Made by a program: the position numbers and the translations under genes
From: Fonticula alba ATCC 38817
Taxonomy: Eukaryota; Protista; Nucleariida
Assembly: GCA_000388065.2 (NCBI GenBank)
Contig: KB932208.1
DNA: 31,508 nucleotides
Reading direction: 5' to 3' (one strand)
The notes under the pieces: generated by a model
Told to the model about the DNA's origin: nothing
Databases searched by the model: none
Seen by the model: the letters and a program-made list of their open reading frames with translations, nothing else
Shown: piece after piece, positions 6,063-31,104 of the stretch
Numbering within the stretch: position 1 is the stretch's first letter
How the letters are laid out: each line of letters opens with the position of its first letter

Positions 6063-7361
6063 TCTCTGGCCTCCTCGTGCCGCCTTCGTCCCTCCCTCGC
6101 TGCACTTGCGGCTGCTCCTGCCACCGTGCCCGCCCTCGCGCCAGCTGACCCNNNNNNNNNNNNNNNNNNNNNNNNNNNNNNNNNNNNNNNNNNNNNNNNN
6201 NNNNNNNNNNNNNNNNNNNNNNNNNNNNNNNNNNNNNNNNNNNNNNNNNNNNNNNNNNNNNNNNNNNGCATCTTCCTCCAGTCGAACAAGATCCTTCGCC
6301 AGTCCAAGCACCCCCGACACACGGTGGCCGAGGTGACCGGCGGCTTCTTCAACCACCTGGGCCTGTCGATGCAGCTCATTCGCGTGCAGGATCACGCCCT
6401 GGCTGGGCACTCCATGTTCGCCGCGCCGCTGGGAGCCGGCATCGGAGACATGATCGAGGTCACTCGGCGGACACTGGCCTCGGACGGGCCGTCGCCCGGG
6501 CCGTCGCCCGGCGGCTGGGCCGCCGGGTCTGCCGGCTCCCCGGCCAGCGCCGGGCCCACCCCCGACGAGGTGACCGTCGCCCCGGCCCCGGCCAAGAAGC
6601 GCGGCGTCACGCGCTTCGTGGCCAACCTCCGCGGCGGCAGCAGCAGCAGCAGCAGCAGCAACACCAACCTCGCTGGGTCCTCCTCGTCCTCCTCCTCCTC
6701 CTCGGCGGCCACTCCCGCTTCGGCCGGCGCGTCGCCCGCCGGCGGGGTGGCCCTCTCGCCGCCGCCGTTCTCCTCGTCGGCCGCCGGTGCCGGGTCCAAG
6801 GGCGGCCCCCTGCCACCCTCCAGTTCCATGCCCTCCTTCAGTATGTTCCACTCGCGGAGTGGCAGCCGTGGCGACATGGGCGCCAGCGCCGGGGCCACAG
6901 CCACCGCGGGCGGCCGTGCCATCGGCGGCGATGACCCCGGCGCAGCCGGCCCCACCATCATCCTCACCGCCGGGTCCGGCTCGTCGGGCGCCGGTGCCGG
7001 GCTTTCGCTCGGCTCCGCGTCGTCCCTCTCCTCGCCGGATCTCAGCTCGCTGGCCATCGGCTCGGCCTCCTCCTCGGCCTCTTCCTCGCCCTACAGCGGT
7101 CTGACCGCCGGCGGCGATGTGTCCACTCCGCTGACCCCCTCGGCGCCGTTCTCCCCCCCGGGGCCCGGGGCGGCCGCGCCGTCCCCCTCCTTCCTGCCGC
7201 AGCGGCGCATGTCCGGAGGCCGGCCGCTGGACTTTGACCGTGGCACCTGCATGGGTCCCTTCGAGAACCCGGACTACCTGGTCAAGTACCACTCCGGCGC
7301 CATCGCCGCCTCGACCGCCAAGCCGACCAAGTCCCGCCGTGGCCTGCCCTTCGGTTTGTGA
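5..7361 (+). CDS. Large RasGAP-domain protein (~2200 aa in window, probably 5'-partial). Exons 5-691, 948-5986 (after removing the false duplication 2653-2885), and from within the gap/~6268 to 7361
   Basis: Arginine-finger-like TLRDNSL (Arg codon 584-586) followed by LLIAYAQVEGADFLEATLGDIVREVI. Signature GAFLFLRFLLPAVSNPDRFGL and RGTLLLVTKVLTNLCNG at ~1340-1485. Intron 692-947 (GTATGT...TGATAG) joins the frames in phase 0. Donor GTACGT at 5987; branch-like CTGAC just before the gap at 6152. Stop TGA 7359-7361. The rest is Ser/Gly/Ala/Pro low complexity plus one helical-looking segment at ~5560-6480. Confidence 0.85.
739..786. repeat. Intronic 8-bp tandem repeat (CGATGYAC)x~6
   Basis: cgatgcac cgatgtac cgatgcac cgatgtac cgatgtac cgatgtgc, read directly inside intron 692-947. 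Confidence 0.85.
2462..2885. other. False tandem duplication (191 bp x2) across the scaffold gap 2654-2686
   Basis: 2462-2652 is repeated at 2695-2885 (offset 233) with one mismatch (AGTACC vs AGGACC). Removing one copy joins the ORFs starting at 1107 and 2702 in frame. Confidence 0.85.
6152..6267. other. Assembly gap (116 N) hiding an intron acceptor and possibly some coding sequence of the RasGAP gene
   Basis: N run. The upstream intron opens at 5987, and coding-like IFLQSNKIL resumes at 6270. Confidence 0.8.
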
Positions 7362-8810: not shown

Positions 8811-11647
8811 ATGCACTGGGAAGAGGTCCGAGGAAAAGCGCCTGCCTCCGCCAGCCCGCCTCCCCTTGCCATGGATGGGTGGGGGCCAGTATCCAATGTC
8901 CCAACCCGTTTCTCAGTCGGGGCTGACAATCCGCCGGCGGTCATCGGCAGCTTCGATGACTTTGGTGACGATGCCGCCGACTTCGGGGGCCAGCTGACCG
9001 GGGATGTCTTTCCTTCGCCCTCCTCCTCCTCGGTGTCGTCGGTCCTGTCGCCGGATCTCGCCGGTCTGAGATCGTCTGTCGGGCCCGATGACGATTTCGC
9101 CGGCCACGATGAGGACGAGTGGACCATCTCGCCGGCTTTGGCCGAGGCCCTCGATCTTCAGGACCAAATCACTCCCGCCTCGTCGGCGCCCCGGTCATCT
9201 GACAGCAAGGTGCGTGCTGTCCGCTGTCCGCTGTCCGCCGTGTGCTGTCCGCTGTCCGCTGTCCGCTGTCCGCTGTCCGCTGTCCGCTGTCCGCTGTCCG
9301 CTGTCCGNNNNNNNNNNNNNNNNNNNNNNNNNNNNNNNNNNNNNNNNNNNNNNNNNNNNNNNNNNNNNNNNNNNNNNNNNNNNNNNNNNNNNNNNNNNNN
9401 NNNNNNNNNNNNNNNNNNNNNNNNNNNNNNNNNNNNNNNNNNNNNNNNNNNNNNNNNNNNNNNNNNNNNNNNNNNNNNNNNNNNNNNNNNNNNNNNNNNN
9501 NNNNNNNNNNNNNNNNNNNNNNGCTGTCCGCTGTCCGCTGTCCGCTGTCCGCTGTCCGCTGTCCGCTGTCCGCTGTCCGCTGTCCGTCAGGAGTCTTAGG
9601 GCTGGGCATGCGTATGCACACGCCTGACTTCTCCTGCTCCTCCCGCCCCTTCGATCTCTGACGTCTTACTGGTTTTGTTGGCCGGAAACACAGCCCGGCT
9701 CCTCACCCTCTTCATCGCAGGCGTCCTCCCCCCTGCTGACGACGAGGTCCACCACGCCACCCAAGGCCGATGCCCTCAACGCATCTCTCAAGAAGGATGG
9801 CCCTCTGCCGGCTGATGCGCCCCCCGCCACTGGAATGCCGCCGGCGCCGTCATCCGGCTCATCGACCTCAAGGCCCACGGCGGGACCCGTCGATGTGCAT
9901 ACGGGCCTCCCTCGTGGCCGTGCCGGTGCCACTCCGAATGCCGCGTCCCTGGCCGCACGGCCGGGCATCGGCAAGCGGCGCCTTTCGCTGGTCGGCGACG
10001 AGGCCAAGGAGGACACACGCTCAGTTCGGTCACGCTCCTCGGCCTCCCTGGCCGCCGGGGCCGGGGCCTCCCCGCCGAGTCCGACTGGTTCGCCGACAGC
10101 TCGATCGGCAGCGACCTATCCACCATGTCCATGGCCGTGCGTTTGCAGATGTTCCCTCCTCCACGCCTCGGCCGACCGCTGTCACGCTTCTCCCACGGCC
10201 GCACCGCCTCCGCCCTCGTCTCACCTCGTGCGACTGGTCCCTTTCCCTCCGCCCCCCGCCCCCCCCGGCGCGCCCTCGCCATGGCTCCAGGAACTGGTTG
10301 AGTCTTCGAAGCACGTGAAAAAGGCCCCATCCTCCAGCAGCAAGGGCGGCCAGGCCCGCCAACGCAATGCCAATCGCCCGCCCCCCGAGCCGAAGCCCTT
10401 CATTCCGCGAGTGGTGTGCAAGTACTTCATGGAGGGCAAGTGCGGCCGCGGGACCGAGTGCACTTTCTCCCACAATGCCATCCCCGACAAGCCGATGGAC
10501 ACCTGCCGGTACTTCCTGTCTGGCAGCTGCAAGCGTGGCGACAACTGCGTCTTCTCCCATGGTTCGTGCTTCCCGCGTTGGCGGCGCATCGCCTATGCCT
10601 CTCGCTTTGGCCGCCCCCTTCCTCTCGCGCCTTCCGTAGTGCCCCCCCCCCCCCCTCCCCCCGTCCTCACGGGTGTCCCTATACTCACACACCAGCACTC
10701 CAACCGTGATAGATCTCAAGTCCATCAGCTGCCGGTTCTACTTCAGCAACAACATCTGCCACATGGGCCACAACTGCCGGTTTTCCCACACCATTCCACC
10801 CGGGTCGTCGGATGGCGATGTGTCGGCCTCCTCCTCGCCGCTGCTGATCCCCGGGCTGACCCCCTCACCGGAGCTGGTGGCTCACCAGCTGGATGTCATG
10901 CTTGGCCCGGTCGGCCGGCCAGGCCATGGTGGCGGTCCCCTGCCGCCTGTCCCCCCGCCGGGGATCTCCCCTTCGCCCTCCTGTCCGAGTCTCCCTCCCG
11001 GAGCCGGTCTGCCCTCCTCCGGCGGGTCGCTGCTGCACTCGTCCTCTTCGCCGGGGCTCCTGTCACCGCACTCCTCCTCGCCCTTGTCCCCGGCGCTGAT
11101 CGACTTGCCGGCCGTTGGTGGGGTTGCCCGGCCTGGCGGGCCGCCGCCGCCGCCGCCGCCAGTGCACTTCCACCCTCGCATTGGGGCTCCCCGGGGTGCC
11201 GGCTCTGGCGCCGGCCCGAGCCCCCTCCTGCCGCCCACTTCTTCGCCATCCTCCTCACCCTTGCTCCCCTCGGTGGCCATGAATGCTGCCGGGGGCCTCC
11301 CGCACCTGCCTCCCCCGCCGGCGCATCTCCAGCAGCCGGGCTTCCATGGGCCCCCTCCGCCACACCATCCACCGCAGCCCTTCCATCCCCACCACCAGCA
11401 TCATCCCCACCGCCATCCCCATCACCAGCATCACCATCACCACTCTCGGCACCCGGCCAACGCCGGCCCGGACTTCCACCCTCCCCACCACCTGCGAGGA
11501 GATACCCGGCCAACGTCGTTCTCGCACCATCGGCCGCCTCCGCCGCCCGGGCTGCCGGCCGCCTCGGCGCCACCACACTTTCGTCCGGCCGCCGGGCGCC
11601 CGCCGCCGGTGGCCGGCCCCAGCGGCCCCCCGCCCTCCCGGGCATAG
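8811..11647 (+). CDS. Triple CCCH zinc-finger protein, ZC3H4/ZC3H6/ZC3H8-like, with a Pro/His-rich C-terminus. Exons ~8811-9209, 9694(or 9721)-~10136, 10291-10561, 10713-11647
   Basis: CKYFMEGKCGRGTECTFSH and CRYFLSGSCKRGDNCVFSH (C-x7-C-x5-C-x3-H), then CRFYFSNNICHMGHNCRFSH (C-x8-C-x5-C-x3-H). Phase-1 intron 10562-10712 restores FSH-D-LKSISC. Donor GTGCGT at 9210. Stop TAG 11645-11647. The structure at 10050-10290 is ambiguous. Confidence 0.85.
9216..9586. repeat. Intronic 7-bp tandem repeat (GCTGTCC)n spanning the gap 9308-9522
   Basis: Near-perfect GCTGTCC units on both sides of a 215-N gap, starting just after the donor at 9210. Confidence 0.95.
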
Positions 11648-13529
11648 AGAGCAGGGACCGGAGCAGCGCATGTGTCTCCCCTCCACGACTCTCTCCGCCC
11701 GTCCCCTCTCCTCCCCTCCCGCAAATAGAGAACAGGGGCGCTCGCACACGCGCGCCGATGCTCATGTGGCCGCCGAGGTGCGCGCCCTGTCCGCGTGATC
11801 ACGATCAAACTTGCCGCAGCCCATCCGCCCGCGTTTCTCCTCCCCCACAGAGTGGCAAACGCCTCGGGGCACATCCGTCATCCTCCCCCCGCCCCTTTCT
11901 CTGTCCCTCTGTTTCGTTGCCTCTCCCTCCCTCGCCGGATATTTCTCCCCTGCCTACCGCCTGGATCCCCGGAGGCTGGGCGCCAGACCTCTCTGCCTCT
12001 GGGATACGCGCGTATGGGTGCGGCGATGGGGGGGGGGGGGGGGCCCGAGTCTTGGCCGTGGCCCCATGGTTGGTCCTGAATCTCCGGGCCGGCCGAGGTG
12101 TTTACGTTCCCCAGGGCAGTGATTCCAGGCGACGTAGGGGGGGGGGGGGGGGGGGGTAGGCGCCTTGCGAATGTTAGGCACAGGCCGCTCGGGGATGCCT
12201 TATACAATGATGTTGGTGTTATAATGGTGGTGGTGGTGGCGGCGGCGGCGGCGGCGGGAGAGGCATGAGCAAGGCAGGGACGAGTCGATCTGGACCCGGG
12301 GGGCCGCCGCACCCACCATCGTTCGGGACCCTCTCGATCGGCATGCATGCCGGCGGACAGGACTTCTTTGGACCATGGGCCCGTTCGCGGGGGGAGGGGG
12401 GCCAGCGATCTAGCCTGCCGGCGGTGTGGCCGGCTCCTTGGCTCTTTTGCCTGGAGTCTGAGTTGGCCCTTCCTCGCCGCCCCCGAACGACAGAGGACTC
12501 GGGGCCCATCGGAGTGGAGCCCATCTCGCGGCCCTTTTTGGCCGGCTGGAGCGCGGCGGGCTTGACATCAGGGCAAGGCAGACAGCCCAGGCGCGGGGCC
12601 GGGGCCGGGGCCGGGGCCGGGGCCGGGGGGGGGGGCGATTTTTGACATTGCGCTCGGGCGGGGCGCGTACATGGCGCCGTGGATTTTGAATTGTCCTGGC
12701 CTTCCTCCCCCCGGGCGGCGGATCGCAACAAGCCTGATCGACCCAGGGGCCATGGCGGTCGGCGCCGGTGCTGGCGGGGGGGGGGGGGGGGCCATTGGCG
12801 CCTGCGGGCCCTTGCGCAAGTGACTAGTGCGCGCGCGTGCGCCTGCCGCGACGGGCCTAGGGCGGCCCTCGTGCAGGGGGAAGCTCCCTGGCGCGAACGT
12901 GTGGGGCGCGCACACCTCACAGATGATTCCCACCCACACCCCCAGGCGTGGGAGCCTAGGCTCCGGCCGTGGCCTCCGCCCAGCCAGGGGGGGGCTTGGG
13001 GAACGATCGACCCCGTCCGCATCCAGGGGGCCCGGTGGCCACTTTCCCCGGAAGGCCTGGGGTACGGCGGGAGCCCGCCCGCGGCCGTTCCCGCCGCCAC
13101 GCCGCGGTACACACTGGGCCCGGAGAATGCTTACGAAGTACGGGGACACGCCCGCACACGGCCACCGGGGAAGAAAAAAAGCCCCCTGCCAGCCAGCCCA
13201 AAGGGGCCACATTCCGGGGGCCCGGTCGATCTGGGCGTGGTCTTCTATTCGCCCAGACTCGGTAGCCAGGCCCCGGTCCGGCACCGCTTGGCCCGATGCC
13301 CCCCGCCCACCGGGCCGCAAGCTCCATCCCCCCCCCCCCCCCCCAGCACCCCTCCGTCTTCCTGGCCACGCCAGGGGATGATCGCTCGCACCAGGATGCC
13401 GTGCTTTCTCCGTGCGTGCCCCCTAGCGCTTAATTGTCCCTCGCCGATACCCGGGTCACGATCGGTCCCCTGCTTCGGCCCCTCCCGTGTATCCCCGTAT
13501 GCCCCGGCCCTCCCCCACACTGGCAGATC

Positions 13530-14174
13530 NNNNNNNNNNNNNNNNNNNNNNNNNNNNNNNNNNNNNNNNNNNNNNNNNNNNNNNNNNNNNNNNNNNNNNN
13601 NNNNNNNNNNNNNNNNNNNNNNNNNNNNNNNNNNNNNNNNNNNNNNNNNNNNNNNNNNNNNNNNNNNNNNNNNNNNNNNNNNNNNNNNNNNNNNNNNNNN
13701 NNNNNNNNNNNNNNNNNNNNNNNNNNNNNNNNNNNNNNNNNNNNNNNNNNNNNNNNNNNNNNNNNNNNNNNNNNNNNNNNNNNNNNNNNNNNNNNNNNNN
13801 NNNNNNNNNNNNNNNNNNNNNNNNNNNNNNNNNNNNNNNNNNNNNNNNNNNNNNNNNNNNNNNNNNNNNNNNNNNNNNNNNNNNNNNNNNNNNNNNNNNN
13901 NNNNNNNNNNNNNNNNNNNNNNNNNNNNNNNNNNNNNNNNNNNNNNNNNNNNNNNNNNNNNNNNNNNNNNNNNNNNNNNNNNNNNNNNNNNNNNNNNNNN
14001 NNNNNNNNNNNNNNNNNNNNNNNNNNNNNNNNNNNNNNNNNNNNNNNNNNNNNNNNNNNNNNNNNNNNNNNNNNNNNNNNNNNNNNNNNNNNNNNNNNNN
14101 NNNNNNNNNNNNNNNNNNNNNNNNNNNNNNNNNNNNNNNNNNNNNNNNNNNNNNNNNNNNNNNNNNNNNNNNNN
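13530..14174. other. Assembly gap (645 N), may hide the first exon of the SPX gene
   Basis: N run. The canonical SPX start (MKFGK...PEW) is not visible on either side. Confidence 0.7.
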
Positions 14175-14255
14175 CCCCCCCCCCCCAACCCGTTCGGCCG
14201 CTTACCCATGTCTTTCTTCGCCCAACACCCACCCCCTCCACATGCAGCCCCAACA

Positions 14256-17061
14256 ATGCCAGGCTCTCGTCCCGAGTCGCGATTCTCCCCAGCCCAGTAC
14301 TTCGACTACCGCGGCCTGAAGGAGATCCTGGCCAAGTTCGTCGACGGTGCGGTCGGCGAGTCGGCCCACCACGATGACGATGTCGATGACCCGGCCGTCG
14401 CGGCGGCCGACAACTACGACTCCCACGACACCGTCGACAAGTCCAAGACCCCGGTGGTTGGAGCCAGCCTCGCCACCCTGCGCCGGGCGGACCCGGCCAC
14501 TCCGGCCTCACCCGGGCCCGCGGCCGCCGGCACCGGGACCACCACCACCGGCATGGTCTCGGCCGCCGGGGCCGCCGCCTCGGCTGCCGTCACCAACGCC
14601 ACCACCTCTCCCCTCCCGGCGGACAAGCAGAATTCCCCCCCTTCCGCACGGTCGGCCTTCCCCGCCAACCACTCCCTCCAGTCCAAGCCCCTGCGCGTGG
14701 CCGTTGATCAGGCCCGGCGGACGTCCCGCGAGGACCCGTACGCCAGCAGCGCCCCCGGCACTCCGGGCGGCACCTGCTCCCTCTTCGGCGCCAGCAACGC
14801 CATCCCCCTCTCGCGGGCAACCAGCAACCCGCACATCATGGAGTCTCTCATGGGCACCGCGCTGCAGCTGGATGACGGTGTGGGCCGGGGCTCCCCGGCC
14901 GCCCCGTTCAAGCCCTTCGTCCTGCCGCCCGAGAAGAAGGAGATCGCCGACCAACTGAAGGAGGCCCTGCGCAACGAGATCAACAAGGTGTCCACCGTGT
15001 TCGACGGCTACCGCGAGGAGATCAAGAAGAAGCGCGAGCAGTGCGAGAAGGAGGTACGCGCATGGTCTCCCCCCCCCCCTCTCTCGCACCCATTGCCCCT
15101 GGGACATGGTCACTGATTCACATGCCCCCCTCCCCTCTGCTCCTTCCCCGTCTCCCCGCCAAACACAGCTCCTTCAGTTTGAGGCCAGCCTTTCTCCCAG
15201 TCTCCGCGGTGACAATAGCGCCTCCACCGACCCGCTGCATTCGTCGAGTGTCGCCTCCACCGAGTCCGACGGCACGGCCTCCTCTTCATCGCACTCCTCC
15301 TCCGGATCCATGTCCCTGCGCAACTCCTCCCAGCACTCCTTCTCCGCCCTCCTGGCGCAGACCGTGGACCCGCTGCCGGATGAGCTGGTGTCCAAGGTGA
15401 CCAGCCTGTGCGATCTGGCCGACGATCTTGTCGCCTACGCCCTGACCAATGAGCAGGCCTGCACCAAGTTCATCAAGAAGTGCGAACGCCGTGCCCCGAC
15501 CGCCGGCGTGTTGGCCTCCCTGGCCCGGTGTGTCCGCTCGGCCAGCTTCACCAGCTCCATTGCCGACATTCGCGAGGTGGCCACCTGGGCGCGGAAGGTA
15601 CGCCCTGCCTGGGATCCTTCTCCCGGCTCCCCCCTTGTCGCCCGGCCTCCTTTCTCCCCCCTGCCGGTCCGGATGATCGTCCCCCTCTCGCGCTAACATT
15701 CCCCCTTCCGCCGCTGCCCATGCAGATCGCCATCGACTCGCGGCCCAGTATCGAGGGCATGGACCCGTCCCCCTCGCACGTTTTCTCCGAGTGTGCCACC
15801 ACCATGGTTGACCCGATCGAAGTGCGCCCTCCCCCCCCCCCCTTGGTTCCCTTTCCTCTCCCTCCCTCCCCTTCCCCGCCTCTAACCAGCCCCTTCCTCC
15901 TCCCCCCCCCCCCTTCCAGAGCGTCCCCACCTTCACCACCCTCGACCTTAACTCCCTGCCGTCCGGGCGCGTGTCGCGCATGTGGATCGCCCTGGCCACC
16001 GATGGTCTGGGCTTGCCCATTCGCGTCCCGGTCATGGTGGCCAAGGGCGTCAAGCGCGGCCCGGTCCTCGGCATCACGGCCGCCCTGCACGGCAACGAGC
16101 TCAACGGCATTCCCCTCATTCACCGCCTCTTCCGGGAAATTGACTGCACCGAGCTTTCCGGCTGCCTGGTGGCCGTGTCCATCGCCAACCCTCCGGGCTT
16201 CCTGCGCCAGCAGCGTGGCTATCTCGACGGGTCGGACCTCAACCGCCTGATGCCGGGCAAGCCCACCGGCACCGCCGGCCAGCAGTACAGTTACTACCTG
16301 CTGGAGCGCATCGTCAAGAAGTTCGACTACTTGCTGGACATGCACACCGCCTCCACCGGCCGTGTCAACTCGCTCTACGTCCGCGCGAACATGATCAACC
16401 CGGTCACCGCCAAGATGGCCATCCTCCAGCACCCGCAGATCATCGTCCACAACACCGGCCCCGATGGGTCGCTTCGTGGCGCGGCTCACGCCCTCGGCAT
16501 CCACGCCATCACCGTCGAGGTGGGCGACCCTCAGCGCTTCCACCGGCGCTTCATTCACTTTGCCCACCTCGGTGTGGAGAACATCATGTGCCACTTGAAG
16601 ATGGTGCCTCGCCAGGTATGTCTCTCTCTTCTCGCCCTCGCCCTCGCCCTCGCCCTCGCCCTCGCCCTCGCCCTCGCCCTCCCCCTCCCCCTCCCCCTCC
16701 ATCTGTTCGCCCATCTCGTCGTTGTACTTGCCCTGCTAACCCGTGTACCCCCTCTTGCCAACAGTCCACCCGCCCCGAGAAGGATGCCGTCGTTTGCACC
16801 CGGTCCTTCTGGATGTTCACCCAATCCGGCGGCATCCTGACCGTCCTGCCCGAGATCAACGACTGGGTCCGGGCCGGCGATGTGGTCGCCCGCGTGTACA
16901 ATGTCTTTGGTGACCTGATCGCCCAGTACATTGCCCCGGAGAATGGCATCGTCGTCGGCAAGAGCGTCAACCCGGTGTGCAGCTCTGGCGATCGCATCCT
17001 CCACCTGGGTGTCACCTCGGAGGATGGCTTCGAGAGCCTGACCAATGACGGCCACCTGTAA
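14256..17061 (+). CDS. SPX domain fused to a succinylglutamate desuccinylase/aspartoacylase-family (AstE/AspA, peptidase M14-like) Zn hydrolase with a C-terminal barrel-sandwich hybrid domain. Exons ~14256/14293-15053, 15169-15597, 15726-15821, 15920-16615, 16765-17061; start unresolved
   Basis: SPX motifs: QYFDYRGLKEIL, ALRNEINKVSTVF, LVAYALTNEQACTKFIKKCERR. M14 motifs: GPVLGITAALHGNELNG, DLNRLMPG, DYLLDMHTAS, ITVEVGDP. Hybrid domain: WMFTQSGGIL...GDVVARVYNVFGD...APENGIVVG...GDRILHLG. Four GT-AG phase-0 introns (15054-15168, 15598-15725, 15822-15919, 16616-16764) keep one reading frame to TAA at 17059-17061. Confidence 0.88.
16631..16678. repeat. Intronic (CTCGCC)x8 microsatellite
   Basis: Read directly inside intron 16616-16764. 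Confidence 0.9.
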
Positions 17062-17959
17062 GTGTGTGCCCGGGGCTGGCAGCGTCCTTTGCCGTACGCA
17101 CGTACGCATGCGCACCCATGTATGAGCCAGCCCGTGCTCCGCTCGGCCTCCCCGTCTCCAATGCGCCCCGGCGGCTGTTTTCCTTTCCGTCTGCCTTTCG
17201 TGTTACACACAGGAGACCAGTCGGGGATGTGCGATATGGGGAGCGACACAAAGAGCCGGAGCCCGGAGAGGTCCCTGGTCGGCGCGTGCCCATCGCGCTG
17301 CTGCTATCGCTGCCTCGACAAGAATGAAAACCAATAAAAACGAAGCTTCACCATGATCGGCACGCGTTTCTTGTTTCTCCCCTCCTCCCTGTGCGTTGGA
17401 AGGTGTATCGGCGGGGCCCGGCCAGGAGATCCCTGCTGTGTGCGGCTCCGCCCTGGGGGAATATGGGGCGGCTGCCCGGAGCAGGGGCATGGGAGGAACA
17501 CAGGGACCACCACCCATCCAGCCGCCCACTCCTTCGCCGCATTTGACACCCACACGCCCCCCCTGCCCCGGTCCTCCCTTGCGCCGTTGATGATGGCCTC
17601 CACGGACAAGGACCCGCTTGCCTTGTCGTCCCCCCCGCGCCTGCCCTTCTCCTTCCTTCAGCCACCTCCAGTGTCAAGTGGCCCGACGCACGTCGAAGCA
17701 CCGAGTCCCTCGGGCTTTTTGATTCCCAATCCCGCCGCCGTCGAGGCCCTGGACATGCCCCTGTGGTGCGTGCATTTGCCCAACACCGACGCACAATGCC
17801 ACGGCCTCCATCTAACACACATGCACCTGGGTCAAAAGCCTTCTTGAGCCGCCCCTCTCGGTCCCTCCGCCGCCCGAGCCCTCCTCGACATGAGATGGAC
17901 ATCCCCGAAATAGAGAAAAAGCAAACAAGGACATCTTCATTTCACCCCCGCGAAGGACC

Positions 17960-29477: not shown

Positions 29478-30203
29478 ACACATACATACATACATACATA
29501 CATACATGTATGTATATCCATATTTGTGTGTGTATGGATGCCAAAAACACGGAAAATACACGGCAAGGCCCAATGAATCAAGGCCAAGAGGCCGGCAGAG
29601 GGAGAGACCGGGGGAGGGAGCAGGATTCGGTGATGTCAGAAAAGAGACGAGCTCCTCTCCACCCGCGTGCACAGTCGCCGTCGGGGGCATGGGCAAAAGA
29701 ACGGTCCGGACAGAGGAGCAGCCAGGCCCATGGGGCGGCACAACGCACCGCTGGTTGCCCCGGAGGGACATTCGTGTGAAGAGGAGGAGGAGCGAGAGGA
29801 AGCAACAGCCTCACCGCCATCCGGGCAGTAGGCCACATCGTCCTCGGAGTATGGCGGGGCCAGAATATCGAAAAGAACTGATGGGGCATCCGGCAGGGCA
29901 GCAAACGCGTGGATGTTCCCGCCGCTGGTGGGAAAGAGCGTGTGCAGAGCCGGCGCCTCGACCACCTGGTCGGCAATGCGGATGGCCTCCCGGCCGCCGA
30001 AGGACCGGACAGTCTGCCGGAGGCTCTGGAGGGCCTGGTTCCTCATGGTGTCCAGTACGGCCCGCGCAGAGTCCGAGCCGAGGGACGCCGCAGCCGGGGC
30101 GGCACTGGAAAGCGGGGTGGGATTGGCCATGCCGTAGGGGGACCGGACGGCCGGCCGCGTCCCGCCGCCCCCGGTGGCGGTGGTGGTGGTGGCGGCGGCG
30201 GCA

Positions 30204-30236
<33 letters not shown>

Positions 30237-31104
30237 GCCGAGGAGCCGGCCAATGTCGCATCCAGGCCGGAGCTCTCCCCAGCGGCGGCCAGGCTCCCGG
30301 AGGAAGAGGATGAGGAGGCCGAGCAGGAGGATGAACAGGAGGCCGACCCGCAGGGGGTCCACACCGGGGCCGACCCGGGCGAAGCCACCCCCCCGGCCGG
30401 GGGAGCCCCATCGCCGGGGCAGACATGGGCGGCCGAGGTGCCGACCGGGAGGGCATCGATGCTGGTGACGGTGGCAGCGGCCCCGGAGGTGGCCATGGTG
30501 CAGGGGGTCGTGCCCTCGCCGGGCCCAGGGAGGGCCAGGGGGATGGGCCGGAAGTTGAACCCGCCGACCGGCTTCTGGAAGAGGGCCTGAGGGGGGGTGT
30601 TTTCCACCCAGTCGAAGGCCTGGTGGCGAACACTGCCCCGAACGACCGACGTGATGACCGTCATGTCGGGATGGTCGTGGAGCGGGAGGTAGGCCCCGCA
30701 GCCGAGTAGGAAGACTCCCATCGACACGTAGGGGGTGTGCAACACCTCGTAGTATGTCACATGGTTGGGCGGCTGCGAGCGGAGGCGCTCTTCGGTGATG
30801 CCCAAATGCGCGATGGTGAGCTGGCCGAGGAGGGTCTGTGGAGGTAGCGCGCCAGGGGCGTCAGTGCTTTTGCGGGGATGGACGTGGCGAGGAGGCCATG
30901 ACCGAGGGAGGGGACGGGGGGCAGCGTGTGGACATGCAAAGGCACCTTCAGTGACAGGAAGAGGACGTGGTCGGTCGGCTCGCCGAAGTTCGGCCGGCCC
31001 TGGTCTGTGGTGAAGAGCCGATGAGAAAGGATGGAGATGCGGTCCAAGAGAGAGAGGGACGGGCCCCGACAAATGTCGAGAAGCTCATCACAGCGGCCGC
31101 ACAT
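27577..31104 (-). CDS. ADO: 2-aminoethanethiol (cysteamine) dioxygenase / plant cysteine oxidase (PCO_ADO cupin) homologue, ~993 aa with two large insertions. Exons 31104-30946, 30835-29815, 29378-27577
   Basis: SMGVFLLGCGAYLPLHDHPDMTVITSVVRG...AFDWVE; TLFPTSGGNIHAF; LFDILAPPY; RRRDCTYF; AYHGTQI. The three Fe-ligand His are at codons 30679, 30673 and 29911. Introns 30836-30945 (phase 0) and 29379-29814 (GTGAGG...ATACAG, phase 1) give a 2982-nt CDS ending in TGA at 27577-27579. Confidence 0.88.
29433..29507. repeat. (CA)n then (TACA)n microsatellites in ADO intron 2
   Basis: Read directly. Preceded by a 16-bp direct repeat (CGCGTATGGTCGGACG x2, 29395-29426) next to the acceptor. Confidence 0.9.

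What the first reader, a model, noticed from the sequence alone, without database searches (positions are those of the whole stretch)
14256..17061. SPX (inositol-pyrophosphate sensor) fused to an M14/AstE-AspA zinc amidohydrolase: a possible phosphate-status-gated enzyme
Seen: one spliced frame joins a complete SPX helical set to an intact M14 hydrolase. The SPX ligand-binding pattern is kept: Y-x3-K in YFDYRGLK and K-x2-KK-x2-R in KFIKKCERR, with Arg at the last Lys-cluster position. The hydrolase keeps the Zn ligands H-x2-E (HGNE) and H (DMHT), the substrate-binding NR (DLNR) and the catalytic-Glu-like TVEVG. Established: SPX domains bind PP-InsPs (InsP7/InsP8) and regulate their partner domain. 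The classic architectures are SPX alone, SPX-EXS, SPX-MFS, SPX-RING, SPX-VTC, SPX-CitMHS/Na-sulfate transporter and SPX-ankyrin-GDPD; SPX-AstE/AspA is not one I recognise. Inference: phosphate signalling may directly control an N-acyl-amino-acid deacylase or carboxypeptidase/deglutamylase, coupling P status to N or amino-acid metabolism.
Basis: partly seen in the sequence, partly recalled or inferred. Interest (0 to 1): 0.85.

Follow-up and report, generated by a model that had tools for sequence, protein, structure and literature searches.

The report
SPX sensor fused to zinc amidohydrolase
This Fonticula alba gene really does join a very diverged phosphate-status sensor (SPX) domain to an intact zinc amidohydrolase in one mRNA, and it belongs to an old, widespread but unstudied eukaryotic protein family, so it is not a one-off.

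Summary
One 2.7-kb transcript contig in four runs joins five exons (14248-15053, 15169-15597, 15726-15821, 15920-16615, 16765-17061) with four GT..AG introns. The product is the annotated Fonticula alba protein H696_04706 (771 aa).

Residues 445-771 are a complete AstE/AspA-type zinc amidohydrolase (Pfam 2.4e-30; DoeB-like fold, TM 0.83). All Zn, catalytic-Glu and carboxylate-clamp residues are kept.

Pfam does not detect an SPX domain here. However, 64 of 65 orthologues carry SPX plus AstE/AspA. A profile built from those orthologues' N-termini scores 39.6 bits on F. alba, against at most 3.0 for 1000 shuffles. The predicted fold matches SPX structures, and eight residues in or beside the SPX ligand pocket are kept.

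The architecture is not unique. At least 101 protein clusters carry it, from early-diverging fungi, Pneumocystis, Plasmodiophora and Balamuthia. Databases label them "SPX domain-containing protein". I found no paper on the family.

The SPX-fused hydrolases form one clade. The nearest bacterial relatives sit in operons with two glutathione-pathway-like amide ligases, which suggests a small-peptide or N-acyl-amino-acid substrate.

Gating by inositol pyrophosphate is inferred, not shown. The first exon lies in the assembly gap, so helix alpha1 (MKF) is unresolved.

The parts
13530..14174 (+). Assembly gap (N run) that must hold the first exon or exons of the gene
   Evidence: Transcript contigs carry 114-126 nt 5' of 14248. 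Their last 30 nt are absent from the window at up to 3 mismatches. No ATGAARTTY (Met-Lys-Phe) occurs anywhere in the window.
14248..15053 (+). Exon holding the annotated start ATG at 14256. It encodes SPX helix alpha2 (YFDYRGLK, 14298-14321), a disordered low-complexity insert of about 180 aa (14355-14900), and the start of helix alpha3 (from 14928).
   Evidence: Acceptor AG at 14246-14247 and donor GT at 15054 are confirmed by spliced contigs. Helices and disorder come from the AF2 models.
15169..15597 (+). Exon encoding the end of alpha3, a second disordered insert (15217-15336), helix alpha4 with N360 and the K-x2-KK-x2-R cluster (15466-15492), and helices alpha5-alpha6
15726..15821 (+). 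Short exon encoding the end of alpha6 and the SPX-hydrolase linker
   Evidence: Joints 15595/15724 and 15821/15920 in all four runs
15920..16615 (+). Exon encoding the AstE/AspA catalytic domain. It holds Zn ligands H498/E501 (16088-16099) and H583 (in DMHT, 16337-16348), R540 (16214-16216), the N549-R550 carboxylate clamp (in DLNR, 16235-16246) and catalytic E641 (in TVEVG, 16511-16525).
   Evidence: Pfam PF24827 at 1.8e-31 on this exon alone. Alignment to DoeB 6TWL/6TWM. Family conservation of at least 63/65 at each site.
16765..17061 (+). Last exon, encoding the C-terminal beta domain of the hydrolase and the stop codon TAA at 17059-17061
   Evidence: Aligns to the DoeB C-terminus.
17062..17356 (+). 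3' UTR, with AATAAA at 17333-17338. Transcript contigs end at 17347-17356.
   Evidence: Sequence; contig ends

Best explanation
The gene encodes the Fonticula alba member of a eukaryote-wide orthologous family. In this family an N-terminal SPX domain, the receptor for inositol pyrophosphates, is covalently joined to a DoeB/AstE/AspA-type zinc amidohydrolase.

Shown here:
- There is one mRNA and one reading frame.
- The hydrolase is intact. It has the H-x2-E...H zinc site, the catalytic Glu, and the Arg plus Asn-Arg clamp that in this superfamily holds a free alpha-carboxylate.
- The N-terminal 413 residues are a very diverged SPX domain. Helices alpha2-alpha6 are interrupted by two disordered low-complexity inserts.
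- That domain still has Y15, Y18, K22, N360, K366, K369, K370 and R373, the equivalents of the residues that form or flank the Vtc4/XPR1 ligand pocket.

Inferred mechanism:
- InsP7/InsP8 binds this basic surface when cellular phosphate is sufficient.
- Binding changes how the SPX helical bundle contacts the hydrolase or its oligomer, and so switches the enzyme.
- The enzyme cleaves an amide bond and releases an L-amino acid with a free alpha-carboxylate from a small N-acyl amino acid or short (iso)peptide.
- The substrate is most likely the same as, or close to, that of the roughly 50%-identical bacterial enzymes. Those are encoded beside a GshB-like ATP-grasp ligase and a GshA/GspS-like ligase, so the substrate may be a glutathione-like or other ligase-made small peptide.

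The direction of the switch (on or off at high phosphate) cannot be told from sequence.
For: Single spliced transcript:
- Four GT..AG joints lie in one contig in each of four runs. The translation is identical to P0234.

Hydrolase:
- Pfam AstE_AspA_cat at 2.4e-30.
- Foldseek to DoeB 6twm, E 4e-26, TM by target 0.83.
- Closest reviewed protein is DoeB E1V7W0.
- Catalytic columns are conserved in 63-65 of 65 family members.

SPX:
- 64/65 family members hit Pfam SPX.
- The family N-terminal profile hits the SPX domains of XPR1, Vtc4, SPX1/2, Pho90 and PHO1 at 1e-32 to 1e-20.
- A profile built without F. alba scores 39.6 bits on its residues 1-425, with blocks alpha2, alpha3 and alpha4 in order. 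The best of 1000 shuffles scores 3.0.
- AF2 places helices 18-30, 225-274, 337-374, 378-389 and 397-413 at pLDDT 83-98.
- The N-terminal model's best PDB matches are almost all SPX structures, e.g. 8tyv_A with TM 0.63 and rmsd 2.3.
- Ligand-pocket residues are conserved in 56-63 of 65 members and are all present in F. alba.
- PMC10167327 documents K127 as part of the IPx-binding lysine cluster, with Y19, Y22 and N121 beside the pocket.

One origin of the fusion:
- All 33 SPX-fused rows plus 3 with long undetected N-termini form one clade, SH-aLRT 96.

Substrate lead:
- 48 of 80 nearest bacterial loci have a GshB-like ATP-grasp gene and/or a ~480-aa GshA/GspS-like protein adjacent on the same strand, often with overlapping stop and start codons.
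- Natural ATP-grasp-hydrolase fusions exist.
Against: - Pfam SPX, PDB phmmer and the ESM Atlas find no SPX signal in the F. alba sequence itself.
- The canonical MKFxKQL helix alpha1 is missing at the annotated start. The 10 codons upstream in the transcript (SAATAASPAS) are not alpha1-like.
- About 220 residues of disordered insert break up the domain.
- The structure models were made with a family alignment, so the SPX fold match is not independent of the sequence homology.
- No ligand-binding, activity or substrate data exist for any family member. Literature searches were empty.
- 32 of 80 bacterial loci lack the ligase neighbours, and fungal loci show no conserved neighbours.
Confidence: 0.6

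Rival explanations
1. The F. alba SPX region is a decayed relic. It descends from an SPX domain but no longer binds inositol pyrophosphates, and serves only as a helical scaffold or oligomerisation arm for a constitutive hydrolase.
For: It is the only one of 65 family members missed by Pfam SPX. Helix alpha1 is not seen. It has very large disordered inserts. Three other clade members (P0003, P0012, P0013) also lack a Pfam SPX hit.
Against: All eight pocket residues (Y15, Y18, K22, N360, K366, K369, K370, R373) are retained despite only 12-24% overall identity to orthologue SPX regions. That pattern indicates purifying selection on the ligand site. The inserts fall in the loops between helices alpha2-alpha3 and alpha3-alpha4, not inside the helices.
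Confidence: 0.2
2. The hydrolase domain is a protein-directed carboxypeptidase, for example one that trims C-terminal or ligase-added Glu or other residues from a protein. SPX would then target or time that protein modification, rather than small-molecule metabolism.
For: The fold is M14-like, and weaker structural matches include carboxypeptidases and the deglutamylase CCP5 (ranks 32-50). The bacterial partners are ATP-grasp ligases whose wider family includes the protein-modifying ligase RimK.
Against: The best matches by far are small-molecule deacylases: DoeB, 3na6, 3cdx and the dipeptidase CphZ, at E 1e-26 to 1e-19, against 1e-9 or weaker for peptidases. The partner ligase scores best as glutathione synthase (1e-41) and only weakly as RimK (1e-11). 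There is no Pfam Peptidase_M14 hit.
Confidence: 0.1
3. The fusion is an annotation or assembly artefact that joins two separate genes.
For: An assembly gap lies just upstream, and the gene is GC- and repeat-rich.
Against: A single contig spans all exons in four runs, with exact GT..AG joints. The same architecture occurs in more than 100 independent protein clusters.
Confidence: 0.02

Closest known systems
DoeB/EutE, N-alpha-acetyl-L-2,4-diaminobutyrate deacetylase (PDB 6TWL/6TWM; Halomonas elongata E1V7W0)
   Same: Same two-domain fold (TM by target 0.81-0.83, about 325 aligned columns). Same H-x2-E...H zinc site, catalytic Glu and Asn-Arg carboxylate clamp.
   Different: Only about 21% identity. 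NCBIfam DoeB scores 74.5 bits against a cut-off of 402.7, so it is not an orthologue. DoeB has no SPX domain and is a bacterial ectoine-catabolism enzyme.
Eukaryotic SPX + AstE/AspA proteins annotated as 'SPX domain-containing protein' (e.g. Mortierella P0001, Pneumocystis jirovecii T551_01152 P0224, Plasmodiophora P0245, Balamuthia P0004)
   Same: Orthologous clade (SH-aLRT 96). Catalytic region 54-67% identical. Same domain order and the same SPX pocket residues.
   Different: They begin with the canonical MKFxKQL and are compact (about 500-730 aa). The F. alba protein lacks a visible alpha1, has about 220 residues of disordered insert, and escapes Pfam SPX. No family member has been characterised.
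Known SPX-enzyme fusions: Vtc4 (SPX-TTM polyphosphate polymerase) and Gde1 (SPX-ankyrin-GDPD)
   Same: An N-terminal SPX module precedes a catalytic domain. The family SPX profile matches Vtc4 and the SPX domain of entry 5ijj (Chaetomium Gde1, per the title) at about 1e-25 to 1e-27, and the N-terminal model also matches them.
   Different: The catalytic partner here is an amidohydrolase acting on C-N bonds, not a phosphate-metabolising enzyme.
Bacterial AstE/AspA-like hydrolases of Myxococcota, Saprospiraceae and Bdellovibrionota encoded beside GshB-like and GshA/GspS-like ligases
   Same: 47-54% identity to the F. alba hydrolase exon among those I sampled (P0020, P0023, P0025, P0026, P0031). 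The extended motifs DG.DLNR.MPG, DLHTAS.GR.NS.YVRA and AIT.EIG.P..FQ are shared.
   Different: About 325 aa with no SPX domain. Regulation is by operon context rather than a fused sensor.
Fungal HutD + AstE/AspA fusions (Phlyctochytrium, Chytridiales sp., Absidia)
   Same: Same hydrolase subfamily (48-53% identity), also carrying an N-terminal accessory domain.
   Different: A separate clade (support 100). The partner domain is HutD, not SPX.

Membership tests
SPX domain (Pfam PF03105) | Match to the curated family model at or above its gathering score | tested here: not met
   No PF03105 hit on P0234 or its residues 1-440, even at E<=10, nor on the exon pieces. By contrast 64 of 65 orthologues hit at E<=0.001.
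SPX domain (Pfam PF03105) | Demonstrable homology to bona fide SPX domains through intermediate sequences | tested here: met
   The orthologue N-terminal profile, built without F. alba, scores 39.6 bits against at most 3.0 for 1000 shuffles. The family profile (alignment A2, which also includes the F. alba row) hits solved SPX domains at 1e-32 to 1e-20.
SPX domain (Pfam PF03105) | Helical architecture: an alpha1-alpha2 hairpin plus the long alpha3/alpha4 and alpha5-alpha6 helices | tested here: inconclusive
   Helices alpha2 to alpha6 are predicted with pLDDT 83-98, and the best PDB matches are SPX structures. Alpha1 (MKF..) is not in the visible sequence, because the first exon lies in the gap. 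The model depends on the family alignment.
SPX domain (Pfam PF03105) | Basic ligand surface: Tyr/Lys of alpha2 and the K-x2-KK-x2-K cluster of alpha4 | tested here: met
   Y15, Y18, K22, N360, K366, K369 and K370 are present, with R373 in place of Lys. The role of K127/Y19/Y22/N121 is documented in PMC10167327.
SPX domain (Pfam PF03105) | Binding of InsP6 or PP-InsPs | not testable with these tools
   Needs ITC or MST with recombinant protein.
AstE/AspA amidohydrolase superfamily (Pfam PF24827) | Match to the family model above its gathering score | tested here: met
   106 bits against a cut-off of 25, E 2.4e-30, covering model positions 2-191 of 192.
AstE/AspA amidohydrolase superfamily (Pfam PF24827) | Zn ligands H-x2-E and a distal His, a catalytic Glu, and Arg plus Asn-Arg substrate contacts | tested here: met
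   H498, E501, H583, E641, R540, N549 and R550 align with the DoeB motifs and are conserved in 63-65 of 65 members.
AstE/AspA amidohydrolase superfamily (Pfam PF24827) | Two-domain fold: a catalytic alpha/beta domain plus a C-terminal beta domain | tested here: met
   TM by target is 0.83 to 6twm over 326 columns, with pLDDT above 90.
DoeB (TIGR02994), aspartoacylase (NF002601) and AstE (TIGR03242) equivalogs | Score at or above the curated equivalog cut-off | tested here: not met
   74.5 against 402.7, 30.7 against 180, and 20.6 against 305.65. The protein is a distinct subfamily whose substrate is unknown.
Classical M14 carboxypeptidases (Pfam Peptidase_M14) | Match to the Peptidase_M14 model | tested here: not met
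   No such hit at E<=10. M14 peptidases appear only as weak structural matches, at E about 1e-9.

The most novel reading that the evidence does not exclude
SPX-AstE/AspA proteins are a previously unstudied class of effector in inositol-pyrophosphate (INPHORS) signalling. It probably arose once early in eukaryotes and was lost in most Dikarya, animals and plants. In this reading, cellular phosphate status directly gates the hydrolysis of a still-unknown small peptide or N-acyl amino acid. That compound would be made by GshA/GshB-like ligases inherited from the same bacterial-type cassette, and could be a glutathione-like or cationic nitrogen-rich compound. The result would couple phosphorus status to nitrogen or amino-acid (or redox) metabolism.
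Probability: 0.3. Interest if true: 0.8.

Novelty: new variant of a known kind. Interest (0 to 1): 0.6.

Why it matters
All well-studied SPX proteins act on phosphate itself: transporters, polyphosphate synthesis, a phosphodiesterase, and regulators of phosphate genes. A conserved SPX domain fused to an amidohydrolase would be a direct link from inositol-pyrophosphate signalling to carbon-nitrogen bond metabolism.

The family occurs in organisms of practical interest. These include Pneumocystis, which keeps the gene despite a reduced genome, arbuscular-mycorrhizal and Mortierella fungi that store much polyphosphate, the clubroot agent Plasmodiophora, and Balamuthia. It is absent from the model yeasts, which probably explains why nobody has studied it.

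The hypothesis is directly testable with recombinant protein. The bacterial operons offer a route to the substrate.

For F. alba specifically, the gene shows that an SPX domain can drift beyond Pfam detection while keeping its ligand site.

Tried and rejected
- Pfam, NCBIfam, PDB phmmer and the ESM Atlas on the separate SPX exons gave no SPX signal. BLASTP of those exons against orthologue P0001 was also empty. Only a family-specific profile worked.
- The hhalign comparison of A2 against P0234 is circular, because P0234 is in A2. I did not use it as evidence.
- I searched for the missing 5' exon. The 30-nt loose end and an MKF-coding pattern are both absent from the window. Read laying shows only 30 letters of a loose end, so the true N-terminus could not be read.
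- I looked for eukaryotic homologues of the ~480-aa bacterial ligase-like neighbour. The search returned only Bacteroidota in its best 120 hits. The only hint of eukaryotic members is an Atlas structural cluster from Mucoromycota.
- Three fungal loci showed no conserved neighbours.
- Eight literature searches found no description of this architecture.
- I rejected an artefactual gene fusion. I also rejected membership of the DoeB, ASPA or AstE equivalogs.
Full report
**Gene structure and identity**

The region is a GC-rich (68%) eukaryotic gene on the + strand. My model has five visible exons:

| Exon | Coordinates | Note |
|---|---|---|
| 1 (visible) | 14248-15053 | annotated ATG at 14256 |
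| 2 | 15169-15597 | |
| 3 | 15726-15821 | |
| 4 | 15920-16615 | |
| 5 | 16765-17061 | TAA at 17059-17061 |

- The model was tested against four public runs that hold the sequence.
- In each run a single contig of 2732-2742 nt lies on all five exons. It skips exactly the four predicted introns, all GT..AG.
- The contigs run on to 17347-17356, which is 9-18 nt past an AATAAA at 17333-17338.
- The SPX-like part and the hydrolase part are therefore on one mRNA.
- The translation from ATG 14256 is identical over 771 residues to database protein P0234. That entry is 'hypothetical protein H696_04706 [Fonticula alba]'.
- Fonticula alba is an opisthokont of the order Rotosphaerida.

**The missing 5' end**

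- The same contigs carry 114-126 nt upstream of the acceptor at 14247/14248.
- The last 30 of those letters occur nowhere in the window, even allowing 3 mismatches.
- In frame, those 30 nt read SAATAASPAS, with no stop and no ATG.
- No Met-Lys-Phe coding pattern exists in the window.
- It remains open whether translation starts at 14256 or further upstream.

**The hydrolase**

- Residues 445-771 match Pfam AstE_AspA_cat at 2.4e-30, 106 bits against a cut-off of 25.
- The AlphaFold model has pLDDT above 90 across this part.
- The model superposes on the ectoine-pathway deacetylase DoeB/EutE (6twm) at E 4e-26, TM by target 0.83 over 326 columns. The next matches are 3na6, 3cdx, 2qj8 and the cyanophycin dipeptidase CphZ.
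- The closest reviewed protein is DoeB of Halomonas.
- The residue alignment to DoeB pairs HGNE with HGDE, DLNR with NLNR, DMHT with DFHS, and TVEVG with TTELG.
- Across 65 family members, H498, E501, R540, N549, R550, H583 and E641 are each conserved in 63-65 sequences. The active site is intact.
- It is not an orthologue of DoeB, aspartoacylase or AstE. All three NCBIfam equivalog scores fall far below their cut-offs.

**The SPX domain**

The F. alba sequence alone gives no SPX signal:
- Pfam finds no SPX on the exon pieces or on the whole protein, even at E<=10.
- PDB phmmer and the ESM Atlas also find nothing.

The decisive evidence comes from relatives:
- A search of 1.84 billion representative proteins with the catalytic exon found many proteins of 500-860 aa that are 54-67% identical. 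Their N-termini match Pfam SPX.
- In an alignment of 65 family members, Pfam finds AstE_AspA_cat in 65 and SPX in 64. The single miss is F. alba.
- A profile of the N-terminal regions of F. alba and 32 orthologues (alignment A2) hits the solved SPX domains of XPR1, Vtc4, rice SPX1/2, Pho90 and PHO1 at 1e-32 to 1e-20.
- A profile built without the F. alba sequence scores 39.6 bits on its residues 1-425. The best of 1000 shuffles scores 3.0 bits.
- That match aligns three blocks in the canonical order: YFDYRGLKEIL (alpha2), LKEALRNEINKVSTVF (alpha3) and LVAYALTNEQACTKFIKKCERR (alpha4).

Structure prediction agrees:
- AlphaFold predicts helices 18-30, 225-274, 337-374, 378-389 and 397-413 with pLDDT 83-98.
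- These helices are separated by disordered low-complexity stretches at 34-215 and 283-322.
- The best PDB matches of the N-terminal model are almost all SPX structures. Examples are Vtc4 7ytj_D at E 8.5e-3 and XPR1 8tyv_A at TM 0.63, rmsd 2.3.
- These models used the family alignment, so they corroborate the sequence homology and are not independent of it.

**Ligand site**

- Aligned to the family, F. alba keeps Y15, Y18, K22, N360, K366, K369 and K370. R373 stands where 57 of 65 members have Lys.
- Each of these columns is conserved in 56-63 of the 65 members.
- By my own positional mapping onto yeast Vtc numbering (not a tool result), Y15, Y18, N360 and K366 correspond to Y19, Y22, N121 and K127. 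PMC10167327 documents K127 as part of the lysine cluster forming the inositol-polyphosphate pocket, and Y19, Y22 and N121 as lying beside it.
- These residues are retained although overall identity to orthologue SPX regions is only 12-24%. That argues the site is still under selection.
- The missing piece is helix alpha1. All 32 orthologue N-termini in that alignment start MKF, MKY, MRF or MRL, typically MKFxKQL. The annotated F. alba start reads MPGSRPESRF.

**Distribution and origin**

- Of the 120 best 90%-identity clusters found with the Mortierella orthologue, 101 carry both PF03105 and PF24827.
- Many are already named 'SPX domain-containing protein' by UniRef.
- Fungal carriers include:
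  - Mortierellomycota;
  - Endogonales and Calcarisporiella;
  - Glomeromycota;
  - Kickxellales, Harpellales, Entomophthorales and Basidiobolus;
  - many chytrids;
  - the Taphrinomycotina genera Pneumocystis and Saitoella.
- Non-fungal carriers include Plasmodiophora, Spongospora, Balamuthia and marine protist transcriptomes.
- In a maximum-likelihood tree of the hydrolase region, all 33 SPX-fused rows form one clade with SH-aLRT 96. Three further proteins with long N-termini that Pfam also misses fall inside it. F. alba lies in this clade but outside the fungal sub-clade.
- A second fungal group is fused to HutD instead of SPX and forms a separate clade with support 100.

**Clues to the substrate**

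- The nearest prokaryotic relatives sampled are 47-54% identical to the F. alba hydrolase exon and about 325 aa long (P0020, P0023, P0025, P0026, P0031).
- Their relatives in the GTDB genome scan come from Myxococcota, Saprospiraceae and other Bacteroidota, Bdellovibrionota and Planctomycetota.
- In 48 of 80 loci they are flanked on the same strand by one or both of two genes, often with overlapping stop and start codons.
  - One is a glutathione-synthase-like ATP-grasp ligase (Pfam GSH-S_ATP 2e-29; NCBIfam glutathione synthase 6e-41, below its cut-off).
  - The other is a ~480-aa protein with no Pfam or NCBIfam match. Its closest structural neighbours in the Atlas are GshA-type glutamate-cysteine ligase, glutathionylspermidine synthase and circularly permuted ATP-grasp proteins.
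- Natural ATP-grasp-hydrolase fusions exist (P0251, P0253, P0257).
- Thirteen loci also carry arginine decarboxylase, and most of these also carry agmatinase and deoxyhypusine-synthase-like genes.
- The conserved Arg plus Asn-Arg clamp holds a free alpha-carboxylate in aspartoacylase-type enzymes. This point is established knowledge that I recall, not something tested here.
- Taken together, this suggests the enzyme removes or releases an amino acid from a small ligase-made peptide or N-acyl amino acid.
- Fungal loci show no conserved neighbours, so the eukaryotic substrate is only inferred.

**Verdict**

It is an SPX-amidohydrolase fusion with an apparently functional ligand site. It is one diverged member of an ancient family that is present in databases but uncharacterised, and regulation by phosphate status remains an inference.
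- Eight literature searches, five of them aimed at this architecture, found no paper describing it.

Noticed in passing
Proteins P0018, P0019, P0022, P0024/P0259, P0037, P0072: A second fungal family fuses the same hydrolase subfamily to an N-terminal HutD domain instead of SPX. It occurs in the chytrids Phlyctochytrium and Chytridiales sp., and in the Mucoromycota genus Absidia. It forms its own clade with support 100.
   Followed up: partly
L024:4514-5968, L011:3455-4993, L058:4529-5959, L001:57-1535: A ~480-aa bacterial protein family has no Pfam or NCBIfam match and sits immediately upstream of the hydrolase in 43 of 80 loci. The Atlas shows a GshA/GspS/circularly-permuted-ATP-grasp-like fold, and a near-identical fold (TM 0.97) in a Mucoromycota protein cluster. 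It is probably an undescribed amide ligase.
   Followed up: partly
L031:7132-10431; also L024, L052, L062: In Saprospiraceae and flavobacterial loci the ligase-hydrolase cassette lies next to arginine decarboxylase, agmatinase and a deoxyhypusine-synthase-like gene. This hints at a polyamine-linked product.
   Followed up: no
Proteins P0251, P0253, P0257: These are natural fusions of the hydrolase with a glutathione-synthase-like ATP-grasp domain. Cluster members also include the two parts as separate proteins of 326 aa and 335 aa.
   Followed up: partly
window 16637-16700 (inside intron 16616-16764): A (CGCCCT)n hexamer microsatellite is followed by (CCCCCT)n. Reads appeared cut there in read laying.
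   Followed up: no
window 13330-13346, 14175-14187 and other gap edges: Long poly-C tracts flank the N runs (2654-2686, 6152-6267, 9308-9522, 13530-14174) and probably caused the assembly gaps. Unrelated abundant transcripts match only these C runs.
   Followed up: no
window 9835-12159 (+): The upstream neighbour is a 774-aa ORF with tandem CCCH zinc fingers (Pfam zf-CCCH at about 1e-12).
   Followed up: no
window 29636-31072 (-): A PCO_ADO (cysteamine / plant cysteine oxidase) homologue scores Pfam 5e-29. The scan has already noted it on this window.
   Followed up: no
Proteins P0003, P0012, P0013: Three metagenomic members of the SPX-fused clade have long N-terminal extensions that Pfam SPX misses, as in F. 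alba. Drift of this SPX domain beyond Pfam detection has therefore happened more than once.
   Followed up: no
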